IMG/VR virus record: IMGVR_UViG_3300032245_001860
Span: 1-64,000 of that record
Strand: one strand, 5' to 3'
Length of the DNA: 64,000 bases
The notes under the pieces are model-generated. The model did no database searches. It was not told the origin of the DNA and worked only from the letters and a program-made list of their open reading frames with translations. Positions 8,316-17,488 of the stretch are shown here, one piece after another. Position numbers and translations under genes: made by a program. The first letter of the stretch is position 1. Each line of letters opens with the position of its first letter.

Positions 8316-8383
8316 TGGTGGATAGCTTAAGTAGAGCAGAGGAACATAAGCCTTTGATATGGGTGCAAATCCCATTCCACCTT
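8316..8383 (+). tRNA. Degenerate tRNA-like element, CAT anticodon
   Basis: GGTGGA/TCCACC acceptor, ATGGG-TGCAAAT-CCCAT T arm, irregular anticodon arm. Confidence 0.5.
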
Positions 8384-14198: not shown

Positions 14199-14813
14199 TT
14201 ACCCACCCTCTTTTATAAAATCTTTTGAAATTACTTGATTGAACTTTCTTGGGTCATACCAGAAACATCCAAAACAAGTACCAAGATAGTTTTCGTTACC
14301 TGTAATCCAACCAGCAGAATAACCTAATCTTCTTGCATCATACCTTTTGTTTGTTTGTTCGCAGATATTACAATGTGTTCTTTTTGTATCATTGCAAGTT
14401 TTGTGTAAAGGTTGAAAATCATCTTCTTTTTGTTTGCTGATGTCTTCGTAAGTCTCAGGTGAATATCTACCATCCTTATGGTCACATTCTATTCGAGCGG
14501 CAGAATCTACAATTCTACATCTTTGTTTTTTTATGGATTTTCTAATATCACTTCGTATATTAGATTCTTTAGATTTATCTACAAAGCCATCAAGTTTTAT
14601 TGCAGTAAGTTTTCCACCAACAATAGTTTTTCTCAAAACATAGTCTTTGAGAGGCCCTCTGTCATCTTGTGCCCAACTACCATTTGTTGTATGGAAACTT
14701 ACACCAAAGTGATTCTGCAACTCTTCGAATGTTATCCATTCAGTTATTCCATCAACAGGCTTCGCATATTCAAAAAACATACGACCATATTCTGCTGGTT
14801 TTAGATTAGCCAT
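14199..14813 (-). CDS. HNH-type restriction endonuclease, NlaIII/IceA family
   Basis: IECDHKDGR, DFQPLHKTCNDTKR.HC..C, RYDA and C.GCFWYDP match the IceA1/R.NlaIII pattern; overlaps the MTase stop codon. Confidence 0.75.
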   Translation of the reverse strand: MANLKPAEYGRMFFEYAKPVDGITEWITFEELQNHFGVSFHTTNGSWAQDDRGPLKDYVLRKTIVGGKLTAIKLDGFVDKSKESNIRSDIRKSIKKQRCRIVDSAARIECDHKDGRYSPETYEDISKQKEDDFQPLHKTCNDTKRTHCNICEQTNKRYDARRLGYSAGWITGNENYLGTCFGCFWYDPRKFNQVISKDFIKEGG

Positions 14814-15510
14814 TTAGTTTACCGATTCTTTCTGTTGCTTTTGTAAAGTATGTTTCGTCCAACTCACAGCCAATGAATTTACGTTTGGTGTTATGACAAG
14901 CCACAGCACAAGAAGCAGAGCCAGCAAAACAATCCAAAACTAAATCACCTTCATTGGAATGTTTAGTAATTAAAGCTTGAAGTAGATTGAGAGGCTTTTG
15001 GGTAGGATGGAATCTATCTCTTTCATGACAGATTGCAAATTCATATATACCCTTATCATATTCGGAATGAAATGTTGGTTTCGAGCCTTTGATTGCAGTG
15101 AGAGCAATTTCTCTTGAATTAGTGAGGTAATTGATTTTCGAATTGATTGGAACTGGATTTGTCTTGACCCATTCTATAAATCTCAACTGCTTAAACTTAG
15201 CATCTTCAATCCATTTTTTAAGTGTTTCAATTTTCCAAAGGTCATAGAAACAAATAATCGTTCCACCGGGTTTTAGAATGCGATAACATTCTTCCATTAC
15301 CTTATCAAGAGCAAAAATCTCATTGTCCCATTCTCCAAACTCGTAGGACATTTTGAATCTTTCCACACCTTTTTCACCACAAGATTCAAAACCTGTAGGG
15401 CGAGAAATTGTATATGGTGGGTCAATCAAAACAAGATTGACACTTTTATCTTCTACTGTTGGCAAAAAATCCAAACAAGATTGATTTACCAGAGATATGT
15501 TTTCATTCAT
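14806..15510 (-). CDS. Beta-class N6-adenine/N4-cytosine DNA methyltransferase
   Basis: IDPPY, HPTQKP and VLDCFAGS motifs in beta order. Confidence 0.93.
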   Translation of the reverse strand: MNENISLVNQSCLDFLPTVEDKSVNLVLIDPPYTISRPTGFESCGEKGVERFKMSYEFGEWDNEIFALDKVMEECYRILKPGGTIICFYDLWKIETLKKWIEDAKFKQLRFIEWVKTNPVPINSKINYLTNSREIALTAIKGSKPTFHSEYDKGIYEFAICHERDRFHPTQKPLNLLQALITKHSNEGDLVLDCFAGSASCAVACHNTKRKFIGCELDETYFTKATERIGKLNG

Positions 15511-15588
15511 AATGAATTATACCATACGATATAGGATGCAAGAAATTAATTTTTTTATTTGACATCTGATCTTGGGGTGATAATATTA

Positions 15589-15759
15589 TCACCCCATAAA
15601 TAAAGAATCGCCAGAACTTTTATCCTGGCGATTTTTGTGCTTATCTTTTCGAGTGTATTTAGTTTTATCTTTAAACACTATGGGTCTTTGCCTACTTGCT
15701 CGCATCATTTCTGTTCCTGATGCAAGATTCAGCTCCTCAACATACTTTCTCTTTTTCAT
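15589..15759 (-). CDS. ArfA/BrfA-like alternative ribosome rescue factor, 56 aa (not in ORF track)
   Basis: AGGAG RBS; MKKRKYVEELNLASGTEMMRASRQRPIVFKDKTKYTRKDKHKNRQDKSSGDSLFMG; terminator hairpin lies inside the ORF before the stop. Confidence 0.65.
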   Translation of the reverse strand: MKKRKYVEELNLASGTEMMRASRQRPIVFKDKTKYTRKDKHKNRQDKSSGDSLFMG

Positions 15760-16069
15760 TTTGAACTCCTATCCAGCCATATGTTTCTGAGTGGTTTTTA
15801 AAATCTTCCACTAACTTATAGTATTCATTCTCGTATATTGTATACAAAGACTTGAATCTTTTTTGGTATTTTGTTTCTGATAATCTTTTTGCCATGTATT
15901 TGACAGTAGTACTACATAAATCCTCTGACATGGTAAAGCCTGTAATATCTTGCACTAAAATTTCATAATGATGAAAATGATTCCATTGCCCTAAACAATC
16001 ACCATTAGAAGTCATCCAGAAAACTTTCTTCATCTCTGCTCTCCCACTACAATATACCAAACTATACAC
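15737..16069 (-). CDS. Hypothetical protein (start likely MKKVFW)
   Basis: ORF in cassette, upstream of the ArfA-like gene. Confidence 0.55.
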   Translation of the reverse strand: MYSLVYCSGRAEMKKVFWMTSNGDCLGQWNHFHHYEILVQDITGFTMSEDLCSTTVKYMAKRLSETKYQKRFKSLYTIYENEYYKLVEDFKNHSETYGWIGVQNEKEKVC

Positions 16070-16196
16070 AAATCTGCAACAAAATTAATTTATTTGACAT
16101 TATGTCTTGGGGTGATAATATTATCACCCCAGATTCAATATTTGTCCATAAAATAATATAATGATACAATAGGTCATCAACTATAAGGAGATTCTT

Positions 16197-16913: not shown

Positions 16914-17120
16914 TTAACTGTACTTTATATTCTCTACTAAAACATAAAACTCCATGGGTGTTTTGTTCAATACATTACACAACTTAACCAAGTTTTTAGA
17001 ACTTGGAATCCTCTGACCTGATAACCAGCTACTAACATGAGGCTGAGAAGTGCCTACTCTTTCTGCTATTTCCTTCTGAGTTAAACCATTCTGTAGTTCC
17101 GATATAAAAAATCTTTTCAC
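16914..17120 (-). CDS. XRE-family HTH transcriptional regulator
   Basis: GLTQKEIAERVGTSQPHVSSWLSGQRIPS; GGAGG RBS before GTG at 17120. Confidence 0.88.
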   Translation of the reverse strand: MKRFFISELQNGLTQKEIAERVGTSQPHVSSWLSGQRIPSSKNLVKLCNVLNKTPMEFYVLVENIKYS

Positions 17121-17275
17121 ATTACAAACCTCCAAGCATAATAATACCACAATATACCACTGTAGACAAATATTATTTATGGGGTGATAATATTATCACC
17201 CCAAGCTGAGTAAATAAAGTAAATTCCATTATGACATATGTGATATAATTGGATATCAAAGACTGGGAGAATCAA

Positions 17276-17488
17276 ATGGATAAAAGGATGGAAGTTATCA
17301 TCTTACAAAAAGGTATGACACAAAAAGAGATAGCAGAGAGAGTGGGAGTACATCAACCCAAAGTTTCAGAATGGCTTAGAGGAGTAAGAATTCCAAATTC
17401 GAAGTTATTATATAAACTTGCTGAAGTCTTAGAAGAAGAACCAGCAGTGTTAGTAGATAAGTTAAAGCAAATATCAGAGTTAGAATAG
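17276..17488 (+). CDS. XRE-family HTH transcriptional regulator (paralogue, divergent)
   Basis: GMTQKEIAERVGVHQPKVSEWLRGVRIPN; GGGAG RBS. Confidence 0.88.
   Translation: MDKRMEVIILQKGMTQKEIAERVGVHQPKVSEWLRGVRIPNSKLLYKLAEVLEEEPAVLVDKLKQISELE

What the first reader, a model, noticed from the sequence alone, without database searches (positions are those of the whole stretch)
15589..15759. Unannotated ArfA-like ribosome-rescue factor on a predicted non-stop mRNA
Seen: a 56-aa ORF with AGGAG RBS containing SRQRPIVFKDKTKYTRKDKHKNR. An intrinsic terminator (AATCGCCAGG/TCTGGCGATT plus T-rich tail, ~15598-15633) lies in the frame just after the KH motif, and the stop codon falls only inside the downstream palindrome. 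Known: E. coli ArfA has FRQRV..[10 protein letters not shown], and ArfA/BrfA are made from truncated mRNAs so that they accumulate only when tmRNA rescue is saturated. Inference: a phage-encoded backup rescue factor retaining this control.
Basis: partly seen in the sequence, partly recalled or inferred. Interest (0 to 1): 0.78.

Follow-up and report, generated by a model that had tools for sequence, protein, structure and literature searches.

The report
Phage ArfA-like peptide on non-stop mRNA
A jumbo phage encodes a 56-residue basic peptide of the uncharacterised DUF7230 family that carries the ribosome-binding "KH" tail motif of the bacterial rescue factor ArfA and, like arfA, has a conserved RNA hairpin/terminator inside its own reading frame, which suggests a new and widespread family of stalled-ribosome rescue factors.

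Summary
A 56-aa ORF (15759..15589, minus strand) has an AGGAG ribosome-binding site. A 12-bp hairpin plus T-rich tail (15633..15596) starts two codons after an invariant Lys-His. The stop codon lies 14 nt beyond the stem, inside a palindrome that recurs nine times in the genome.

The protein is not a member of the ArfA family: the Pfam ArfA model gives no hit for it or for 118 relatives. It belongs to DUF7230, which has no assigned function. Its C-terminal module (F/Y)KDK(T/S)KYxRKxKH aligns with ArfA's KGKGSYxRKxKH better than any of 400 composition-preserving permutations. The N-terminal halves do not align.

The hairpin is selected as RNA: 95.5% of stem cells pair, compensatory changes alter the encoded residues, one homologue keeps the stem despite a frameshift, and synonymous sites are frozen only in the stem. 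Unrelated hairpins or terminators sit at the same in-ORF position in at least seven DUF7230 lineages (the phage class A plus six others), including chromosomal gammaproteobacterial genes. Other members simply stop 3–8 residues after KH.

Best reading (confidence about 0.5): a release-factor-dependent rescue factor analogous to ArfA/BrfA, made from a non-stop mRNA. No transcript or biochemical evidence exists; the one RNA data set was uninformative.

The parts
16051..16079 (-). Promoter-like sequence for the two-gene operon: TTGCAG, 17 nt, TGG-TATATT (extended -10). It lies just downstream of a copy of the repeated palindrome module (16111-16128).
   Evidence: Read. The same arrangement follows other palindrome copies. 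Consensus match only; function inferred.
15740..16033 (-). Upstream partner ORF, 98 aa, function unknown. Its stop (15739-15737) overlaps the start of the DUF7230 gene by 23 nt.
   Evidence: Conserved upstream, on the same strand and overlapping, in 78 of 90 loci. No Pfam hit. AlphaFold2 pLDDT 90.5. Only weak fold resemblance to SUKH/SMI1/Imm63/DMP12-type proteins.
15766..15770 (-). Shine-Dalgarno AGGAG, 6 nt before the ATG.
   Evidence: read directly.
15589..15759 (-). DUF7230 ORF, 56 aa including the read-through tail; stop TGA at 15591-15589.
   Evidence: PF23876, 27.6 bits against a cut-off of 27. 58 homologue clusters. 122 clusters at 50% identity.
15634..15675 (-). Codons 29-42, FKDKTKYTRKDKHK: the near-invariant C-terminal module of the family, containing the Lys-His pair. 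It is the inferred binding element for the ribosomal mRNA channel.
   Evidence: Invariant columns. Aligns to ArfA [12 protein letters not shown]. The KH motif of ArfA and BrfA contacts 16S U534 (PMC6881298).
15606..15633 (-). In-ORF hairpin: 12-bp stem, 4-nt loop, about -16 kcal/mol. It encodes N-R-Q-D-K-S-S-G-D.
   Evidence: Conservation and covariation in 46 distinct sequences.
15596..15605 (-). T-rich tail CTTTATTTAT (7 T in 10). Transcripts terminated here would end before the stop codon.
   Evidence: The position of the 3' end is inferred from general knowledge of intrinsic terminators; it was not measured.
15574..15595 (.). 22-bp palindrome that holds the stop codon. It is one of nine copies of a repeated early-region module and heads the next operon (methylase plus ICEA-like nuclease).

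Best explanation
The ORF encodes a small basic peptide of the DUF7230 family that works like ArfA or BrfA.

Proposed mechanism:
- The C-terminal tail (FKDKTKYTRKDKH) binds the empty mRNA entry channel of ribosomes stalled at the 3' end of truncated mRNAs.
- The conserved segment before it (LASGTEMMRAS...F) recruits or activates a host release factor, which frees the peptidyl-tRNA.
- In this phage the mRNA ends at the hairpin/terminator inside the ORF, upstream of the stop codon, so the factor is translated from a non-stop message.
- While host tmRNA-SmpB has spare capacity, the nascent peptide is tagged and degraded. When trans-translation is saturated, as expected when infection or RNA-cleaving defences flood the cell with broken mRNAs, the untagged peptide of about 50 aa accumulates and keeps ribosomes available.

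Shown by sequence and comparison: the gene, the motif, its similarity to ArfA's tail, the RNA-level conservation of the hairpin, its position before the stop, and the recurrence of that layout.

Inferred: ribosome binding, release-factor recruitment, the actual 3' end, tmRNA control, and the benefit to the phage.
For: 1. Real conserved gene. There are 58 close clusters and 122 clusters at 50% identity, all 32-128 aa with the module at the C-terminus.

2. Tail motif.
- BLASTP against E. coli ArfA gives 9 of 17 identities over KDKTKYTRKDKHKNRQD / [17 protein letters not shown].
- hhalign gives score 22.1 and probability 51-58%. None of 400 column permutations reach that score (mean 8.5, sd 2.3).
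- E. coli ArfA's only other Pfam hit is DUF7230, E = 0.11, over the same residues.
- 84 of the 100 nearest named Atlas clusters carry the ArfA family (a lead only).
- The literature reports that the KGKGS and KH residues of ArfA/BrfA lie in the mRNA channel and contact 16S U534.

3. Hairpin selected as RNA.
- 95.5% of stem cells pair, against 35-52% when the partners are slid.
- One pair runs CG 26 / UG 13 / UA 6, and the change converts Gly to Asp. Another runs GC 31 / AU 3, converting Ser to Phe.
- The stem codons AAT, CAG and GAT are invariant in 46 of 46 sequences, while the Lys and His codons just upstream vary.
- L077 keeps the stem although a 1-nt deletion shifts the reading frame of the 3' arm.
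- Tails after the stem vary in length and sequence; the stop lies 39-114 nt after the His codon.

4. Same position as in arfA. In 29 diverse arfA genes the hairpin mostly starts 4-36 nt after the Tyr codon; here it starts at +24.

5. Recurrence. Sequence-unrelated in-ORF hairpins or terminators directly follow KH in six further lineages, each with the stop well downstream: the chromosomal NPVAK group (L148, L151, L152; dG -27 to -30), L156, L157 and L158, L160/L161 (dG -41 and -48), and L164/L165.

6. Members without a hairpin stop 3-8 residues after KH, so the tail beyond the hairpin is dispensable.

7. Cellular carriers.
- Four reduced Bacilli genomes have tmRNA, RF1 and RF2 but no ArfA or ArfB.
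- In 401 gammaproteobacterial genomes, 10 have DUF7230, 6 have ArfA and none has both. The expected overlap is only about 0.15, so this result is merely compatible.

8. The phage has no release factor, SmpB or tmRNA of its own.
Against: - It is not detected by the ArfA HMM, nor are any of 118 relatives.
- No ArfA or BrfA chain in the PDB is reached even at E <= 10.
- Only 10-15 residues align. The probability falls to 6-37% with broader profiles.
- There is no counterpart to ArfA's RF2-binding residues 15-31.
- The shared motif is short and lysine-rich, and could reflect convergence or a different RNA-binding role.
- In the phage clade, the hairpin is present exactly when the gene ends its operon and absent when a downstream gene overlaps it. 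A plain terminator would behave the same way.
- In several class A variants the T-tract is weak, or the stop lies only 5-7 nt after the stem. Terminated RNAs might then still contain the stop.
- The host is unknown.
- The only RNA library holding the region gave low-depth contigs over 15695-16006 and no 3' end.
- The conserved partner ORF has no translation-related fold.
Confidence: 0.5

Rival explanations
1. Ordinary operon terminator. The peptide is a small basic protein with some other role, for example nucleic-acid binding. The hairpin is just the intrinsic terminator of a compact two-gene early operon that happens to overlap the dispensable end of the ORF, and being non-stop has no regulatory meaning.
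For: - The hairpin occurs only in loci where the gene is last in the operon. In class B a downstream gene overlaps it and there is no hairpin.
- The T-rich tail resembles those of the phage's other terminators.
- No transcript or protein data exist.
Against: - None of the 46 distinct class A sequences has a stop before or inside the hairpin, although class B shows that the protein can end 7 residues after His.
- The same before-the-stop placement recurs with unrelated hairpins in at least six other lineages, including monocistronic chromosomal genes whose long stems lack T-tracts and look like RNase III sites rather than terminators.
- Any transcript ending at such a terminator is by construction a non-stop mRNA and so a tmRNA substrate.
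- The motif similarity to ArfA's tail exceeds chance.
Confidence: 0.2
2. A ribosome-targeting peptide with a different outcome. The tail occupies the mRNA channel, but the peptide blocks rather than rescues. It might compete with the SmpB tail to inhibit trans-translation, or act as a shut-off or hibernation-type factor for vacant ribosomes.
For: - The same tail-motif evidence applies.
- The N-terminal part is unlike ArfA's RF2-binding segment and differs widely between subfamilies.
- Peptides that mimic the SmpB tail inhibit tmRNA binding (review PMC8012679).
- The gene sits in the early region of a jumbo phage.
Against: - Chromosomal copies in free-living Gammaproteobacteria and in reduced Bacilli lacking ArfA and ArfB fit a housekeeping backup role better than an inhibitor.
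- The recurrent non-stop layout is so far known only for rescue factors (ArfA, BrfA).
Confidence: 0.2
3. A true, merely divergent arfA orthologue that the phage captured from a beta- or gammaproteobacterial host.
For: - The C-terminal motif and the hairpin position match arfA.
- Genuine ArfA homologues do exist in cultured phages: Arash gp99 and pf16. Phage RXM g10 is annotated as ArfA.
- A loose co-linear alignment of the NPVAK group with ArfA scores above most permutations; 3 of 100 reach it.
Against: - The ArfA HMM is negative for the window protein and for all 118 representatives.
- The N-terminal halves do not align.
- The family has its own Pfam model and its own wide distribution, including Bacilli.
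Confidence: 0.05
4. Spurious ORF: only the RNA hairpin and the promoter module are functional.
For: The ORF is very short and lysine-rich in a genome of 33% G+C.
Against: - It has a strong Shine-Dalgarno sequence.
- 21 residues are invariant across 28 sequences while synonymous sites vary.
- The family spans phages and cellular chromosomes.
Confidence: 0.01

Closest known systems
ArfA (alternative ribosome-rescue factor A, Pfam PF03889; E. coli YhdL)
   Same: - Small basic peptide with a mature size of about 50 aa.
- C-terminal K-x-K-x-x-Y-x-R-K-x-K-H motif containing the Lys-His pair.
- A strong hairpin inside the ORF, starting a few codons after that motif and before the stop.
- A variable or hydrophobic, dispensable read-through tail.
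   Different: - No match to the ArfA HMM.
- Gly-rich KGKGS is replaced by KDK(T/S)K.
- An aromatic residue sits directly before the motif instead of F25, which lies 8 residues upstream in ArfA.
- No DNAxxALLxDPLFRxRVE segment for binding RF2.
- The family also occurs in Bacilli and phages, whereas ArfA is confined to beta- and gammaproteobacteria (PMC6881298).
BrfA (Bacillus subtilis YqkK)
   Same: - A rho-independent terminator inside the coding region gives a non-stop mRNA and tmRNA-dependent control.
- Has a Lys-His motif in a basic C-terminal tail.
- Regarded as having arisen independently of ArfA (PMC6881298), which is a precedent for repeated invention of this design.
   Different: - No sequence similarity was detected; the PDB profile search did not reach the BrfA chain.
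- BrfA is limited to Bacillus.
ArfT (Francisella tularensis)
   Same: A 40-aa release-factor-dependent rescue factor with an ordinary stop codon and no non-stop control. In that respect it resembles the hairpin-less DUF7230 members (class B and the Bacilli genes).
   Different: ArfT's tail is KKGGSTNKK and belongs to a KGG-repeat family (PMC6299226, PMC6514570). There is no KYxRKxKH module.
Phage-borne true ArfA homologues (Salmonella phage Arash gp99, Pseudomonas phage pf16, Citromicrobium phage RXM g10)
   Same: They show that lytic phages carry arfA-type genes.
   Different: The Arash and pf16 genes match ArfA itself and have ordinary stops about 10 codons after the Tyr, with no in-ORF hairpin. 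I did not examine the RXM g10 sequence; it is known here only as an annotation. None has been tested experimentally as far as the searched literature shows.

Membership tests
DUF7230 (Pfam PF23876) | Score at or above the family's gathering threshold | tested here: met
   27.6 bits against a cut-off of 27 for the window protein. 118 of 118 representative relatives match, best E = 4e-21.
ArfA (Pfam PF03889) | Match to the family HMM | tested here: not met
   No hit at E <= 1 for the window protein, for 118 relatives, or at E <= 10 for 10 chromosomal members. As a control, E. coli ArfA scores 89.5 bits.
ArfA (Pfam PF03889) | Basic C-terminal tail with KGKGS-Y-x-R-K-x-K-H, including the Lys-His pair that contacts 16S rRNA in the mRNA channel | tested here: met
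   K30-x-K32-x-x-Y35-x-R37-K38-x-K40-H41 aligns without gaps to ArfA K34...H45. None of 400 permutations reach the score. The glycines of KGKGS are not conserved.
ArfA (Pfam PF03889) | N-terminal RF2-binding segment (residues 15-31; A18, F25; beta-strand addition to RF2) | tested here: not met
   No alignment of the N-terminal halves in any profile comparison. A loose co-linear alignment scores 8.2 against 2.5 +/- 2.0 for permutations, and 3 of 100 permutations reach it.
ArfA / BrfA (functional class) | Hairpin or terminator inside the ORF, upstream of the stop codon | tested here: met
   12-bp hairpin at 15633..15606 plus a T-rich tail; the stop is 14 nt beyond the stem. Conserved with covariation. 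Its position matches real arfA genes.
ArfA / BrfA (functional class) | mRNA actually ends before the stop; product is tagged by tmRNA and accumulates only without trans-translation | tested here: inconclusive
   The only RNA library holding the region has low-depth contigs over 15695-16006 and gives no 3' ends.
ArfA / BrfA (functional class) | RF2-dependent peptidyl-tRNA hydrolysis on non-stop ribosomes; synthetic lethality with ssrA | not testable with these tools
   Requires biochemistry and genetics.
BrfA | Sequence similarity to B. subtilis BrfA | tested here: not met
   Searches of all PDB chains with the sequence and with the family profile gave no rescue-factor hit at E <= 10. The library includes the BrfA-ribosome entry 6SZS cited in PMC8012679.
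ArfT | KKGGSTNKK / KGG-repeat helix | tested here: not met
   The motif is absent from the sequence, and no KGG-type Pfam hit appears at E <= 1. The ArfT description comes from PMC6299226 and PMC6514570.
Intrinsic (rho-independent) terminator | G+C-containing stem-loop followed by a U-tract | tested here: met
   12 pairs (5 G-C), loop of 4, tail with 7 T in 10. In many homologues the tail is weaker, with 3-5 T.

The most novel reading that the evidence does not exclude
DUF7230 is a fourth, and so far the most widely spread, family of release-factor-dependent ribosome rescue factors. It occurs in freshwater jumbo phages, in Gammaproteobacteria and in genome-reduced Bacilli. In-ORF terminators or RNase III hairpins, and hence tmRNA-gated non-stop expression, evolved repeatedly at the same position in the family. 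The phage copies keep ribosomes free when infection, or RNA-cleaving host defences, saturate trans-translation.
Probability: 0.4. Interest if true: 0.85.

Novelty: new variant of a known kind. Interest (0 to 1): 0.72.

Why it matters
Release-factor-dependent rescue factors (ArfA, BrfA, ArfT) were each found by genetics in a single organism, and reviews say outright that more must exist but cannot be found by homology (PMC8012679). This work gives a sequence signature that picks out a whole uncharacterised family: a C-terminal KYxRKxKH module followed by a hairpin inside the ORF. The family comprises 122 clusters at 50% identity and is at least as frequent as ArfA in a 401-genome gammaproteobacterial sample.

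If the function is confirmed, three things follow:
- It would explain how some bacteria without ArfA or ArfB could tolerate a shortfall in trans-translation.
- It would show that the 'make the backup factor from a non-stop mRNA' circuit is a recurrent evolutionary solution.
- It would add ribosome rescue to the translation functions that large phages bring with them.

The claim can be tested directly with a synthetic 50-residue peptide.

Tried and rejected
- ArfA membership: rejected.
- PDB searches with the sequence and with the family profile for ArfA or BrfA chains: nothing; only a chance uS17 hit at E = 1.6.
- NCBIfam: no hit.
- Literature search for 'DUF7230': no papers.
- Cultured-phage collection: no match by DNA or by protein for the window protein or for P0187.
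- Reads: the RNA library was too thin to define 3' ends.
- Co-occurrence test, DUF7230 against ArfA: no overlap, but the expected overlap was about 0.15, so it is uninformative. The proteobacterial phylum sample had only the seed genome.
- Genomes behind L148 and L152 are not held, so their rescue repertoire could not be checked.
- The weak ArfA-model hits in G005 are a short frame without a start codon, probably chance.
- L167 as a bridge to ArfA's N-terminus: seen by eye, not supported by Pfam, weak in hhalign.
- The partner ORF's fold gave no link to translation.
- I did not predict a structure for the 56-aa peptide. ArfA-type peptides are only ordered on the ribosome, and the tool cannot model complexes.
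- I did not search for RqcH or BrfA in the Bacilli carriers, so 'no other backup' there covers only ArfA and ArfB.
- Host identity was not resolved. One homologue sits on a 4-kb contig binned with a Crocinitomicaceae MAG, which is weak evidence.

Full report
**1. What is there**

The window is the first 64 kb of a 316-kb virus contig (33% G+C, CheckV completeness 88%), that is, a jumbo phage from freshwater or subsurface metagenomes.

- On the minus strand an ATG at 15759 opens a 56-codon frame that ends at TGA 15591-15589. AGGAG lies 6 nt upstream.
- The product is MKKRKYVEELNLASGTEMMRASRQRPIVFKDKTKYTRKDKHKNRQDKSSGDSLFMG.
- Two codons after His41 begins a 12-bp hairpin (15633..15606) followed by CTTTATTTAT.
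- The stop lies 14 nt beyond the stem, inside a 22-bp palindrome (15595..15574).
- The 86-nt stretch folds into these two hairpins at -33.3 kcal/mol, z = -7.75 against shuffles.

The palindrome, however, is one of nine copies of a repeated module in the first 27 kb: palindrome, about 10 nt, GTCAAATAA, then an extended -10. This module heads the neighbouring early operons. That the stop falls inside it is incidental.

**2. Which family**

Pfam places the peptide in DUF7230 (PF23876), just above threshold at 27.6 bits against 27. It does not place it in ArfA. NCBIfam has nothing.

- The word-index search found 58 close clusters, all labelled 'hypothetical'.
- The exhaustive profile search of 1.84 billion representatives found 122 clusters at E <= 1e-3. 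All are 32-128 aa with the match at the C-terminal end.
- All 118 that I scanned hit DUF7230 and none hits ArfA.
- Alignments show one near-invariant module, (F/Y)(K/R)DK(T/S)KYxRKxKH, preceded by N-terminal parts that differ between subfamilies.

Members occur in:
- phage contigs;
- four genome-reduced Bacilli MAGs and a proteobacterial MAG;
- ordinary chromosomal contexts of Gammaproteobacteria, next to aroQ-accBC-prmA and next to gidAB-parAB. One of these is named 'DUF7230 family protein [Gammaproteobacteria bacterium]'.

In an even sample of 401 gammaproteobacterial species genomes, 10 carry the family and 6 carry ArfA. No paper in the library mentions DUF7230.

**3. How like ArfA?**

I took E. 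coli arfA from the annotated K-12 record and 29 diverse arfA genes from proteobacterial genomes.

- BLASTP aligns 17 residues with 9 identities.
- Profile-profile comparison aligns 15 columns, KDKtKYtRKxKHKNr with KGKGSYxRxxkh. The score is 22.1 and the probability 51-58%.
- Neither 200 permutations of the ArfA columns nor 200 of the DUF7230 columns reach that score (mean 8.5, sd 2.3, maximum 21.4). The reversed profile scores 10.2.
- Conversely, E. coli ArfA's only other Pfam hit at E <= 10 is DUF7230, E = 0.11, over residues 29-51.
- A language-model neighbour search, with DUF7230 excluded, returned ArfA-bearing clusters for 84 of its 100 named hits. The scores were low (0.81), so this is only a lead.

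According to the literature, this is exactly the part of ArfA that lies in the empty mRNA channel. The Lys-His pair, shared with the otherwise unrelated BrfA, contacts 16S U534 (PMC6299226, PMC6881298, PMC8012679).

Against membership:
- The N-terminal halves never align.
- Broader DUF7230 profiles lower the probability to 6-37%.
- No ArfA or BrfA chain in the PDB is reached.
- A loose co-linear alignment of the gammaproteobacterial NPVAK group with ArfA is marginal; 3 of 100 permutations reach it.

So the two families share a tail motif, and whether that reflects common ancestry or convergence is open. The gene should not be filed as ArfA.

**4. The hairpin**

I collected 94 homologous loci. 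They fall into two classes.

- Class A (65 loci, 46 distinct sequences, including the window) reads ...KHKNRQ-x3-SGD.... It has a hairpin of -12 to -23 kcal/mol starting 1-6 nt after the His codon. The stop follows 39-114 nt after that codon, and the tails differ in length and sequence.
- Class B (25 loci) reads ...KHKKGSENE*. It stops 24-30 nt after the His codon, has no hairpin, and in 24 of the 25 loci is overlapped by a downstream gene.

Evidence that the class A hairpin is conserved as RNA rather than as protein:
- 95.5% of stem cells pair, against 35-52% with slid partners.
- One pair runs CG (26), UG (13), UA (6), and the G-to-A change converts Gly to Asp.
- Another pair runs GC (31), AU (3), and converts Ser to Phe.
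- The stem codons AAT, CAG and GAT are invariant in 46 of 46, while the Lys and His codons just upstream vary at their third positions.
- L077 keeps the stem although a 1-nt deletion in the loop changes the reading frame of the 3' arm.

The covariation is modest in amount because the sequences are close relatives, but it is consistent.

**5. The same design elsewhere**

In the 29 arfA genes a strong in-ORF hairpin mostly starts 4-36 nt after the Tyr codon of KGKGSY. In the phage gene it starts at +24.

Other DUF7230 lineages with long tails carry their own, sequence-unrelated hairpins at that position and before their stops:
- the chromosomal NPVAK group (L148, L151, L152: 17-20 bp stems, -27 to -30 kcal/mol, +21 to +82 nt, hydrophobic tails);
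- L156, L157 and L158, which have terminator-like stems followed by T-runs;
- L160 and L161, at -41 and -48 kcal/mol;
- L164 and L165, which have classic terminators.

Members without such a hairpin end 3-8 residues after KH. A KH tail, then an in-ORF hairpin, then a dispensable read-through tail is the hallmark of arfA and brfA. In my view its repeated appearance here is the strongest argument that the family's products are meant to be made from non-stop mRNAs.

**6. Context**

- The gene is the second of a two-gene cassette. The 98-aa upstream ORF (16033..15740) is conserved in 78 of 90 loci. It folds confidently (pLDDT 90.5) but resembles only SUKH/SMI1/Imm63/DMP12-type proteins, and only weakly. 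It gives no link to translation.
- The phage encodes tRNAs but no tmRNA, SmpB or release factor, so any rescue would use host release factors.
- The four Bacilli carriers have tmRNA, RF1 and RF2 but no ArfA and no third GGQ protein, meaning no ArfB.
- In the gammaproteobacterial sample DUF7230 and ArfA never co-occur. With 10 and 6 carriers among 401 genomes the expected overlap is only 0.15, so this says little.

**7. Direct evidence sought**

One freshwater metatranscriptome holds part of the region. Laid on the window, it gives only contigs of depth 2-4 over 15695-16006 and no defined ends. That is compatible with transcription of the cassette but uninformative about the 3' end.

**8. Precedents in phages**

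- True ArfA homologues exist in cultured lytic phages: Salmonella phage Arash gp99 (annotated 'ribosomal protein L2') and an unannotated frame in Pseudomonas phage pf16. Both have ordinary stops and no in-ORF hairpin.
- One paper annotates ArfA in phage RXM (PMC8953757).

Phage-borne arfA-type genes are therefore not unheard of at the annotation level. A DUF7230 gene with the non-stop layout has not been described.

**9. Verdict**

My best explanation (confidence about 0.5) is an ArfA/BrfA-like, release-factor-dependent rescue factor expressed from a non-stop mRNA. The main rivals, at about 0.2 each, are:
- an ordinary operon terminator intruding into a small basic protein of other function;
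- a peptide that binds the mRNA channel but inhibits rather than rescues.

I rate it a new variant of a known kind, with interest 0.72.

Noticed in passing
window 4685, 9124, 12674, 14169, 15576, 16111, 17183, 19170, 27203 (start of the 18-bp core): A 22-bp perfect palindrome, GGGGTGATAATATTATCACCCC, occurs nine times in the first 27 kb and nowhere else in the 316-kb genome. It is usually followed about 10 nt later by GTCAAATAA, an A/T run and an extended -10 (TGGTATAAT-like). It looks like a repeated early promoter/operator or insulator module. Unitigs of the source run break at it.
   Followed up: partly
window 15740-16033 (-): A 98-aa ORF overlaps the start of the DUF7230 gene and is conserved in 78 of 90 loci. 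It has no Pfam hit. The AlphaFold2 model is confident (pLDDT 90.5) and only weakly resembles SUKH/SMI1, Imm63, DUF1840 and the DNA-mimic DMP12.
   Followed up: partly
window 14199-15510 (-): An N6/N4 DNA methylase (PF01555, E = 3e-35) is followed by an overlapping ICEA/NlaIII-like endonuclease (PF05315, E = 1e-28). This is a restriction-modification-like pair in a phage early region. The -10 element sits only 5 nt before the methylase ATG, so the mRNA may be leaderless.
   Followed up: no
window 16914-17150 (-) and 17249-17488 (+): Two divergently oriented HTH_3 (Cro/cI-type) genes flank a copy of the palindrome at 17183. This may be a repressor/antirepressor switch acting on the repeated palindrome.
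   Followed up: no
L154:1417-1641 (Salmonella phage Arash gp99); L155:1486-1638 (Pseudomonas phage pf16): Genuine ArfA homologues (...DPLFSQKVEKPKKGKGSYRR...) occur in cultured lytic phages. One is annotated 'ribosomal protein L2'. The other lies in an unannotated frame opposite pf16_199. Both have ordinary stops and no in-ORF hairpin.
   Followed up: partly
L016-L019 (Bacilli MAGs, genomes of 0.8-1.3 Mb): 41-42-aa chromosomal DUF7230 genes (MKKKKVALKDPNAKAMWGRTRSTTFKDKTKYTRKEKHKNNYR) occur in genomes that have tmRNA, RF1 and RF2 but no detectable ArfA or ArfB. They are candidates for the only release-factor-dependent backup factor found there; RqcH and BrfA were not searched for.
   Followed up: partly
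window 8316-8383 (+): Rfam finds a fifth tRNA (39.4 bits) next to tRNA-Met that ARAGORN did not report.
   Followed up: no
L167:1489-1596 (-): A 36-aa gammaproteobacterial DUF7230 member whose N-terminus (NPIAKQVRTPRFRPRVVQDKKK) resembles ArfA's RF2-binding stretch ([22 protein letters not shown]) by eye. Pfam does not support this. It may be a lead for linking the two families.
   Followed up: partly
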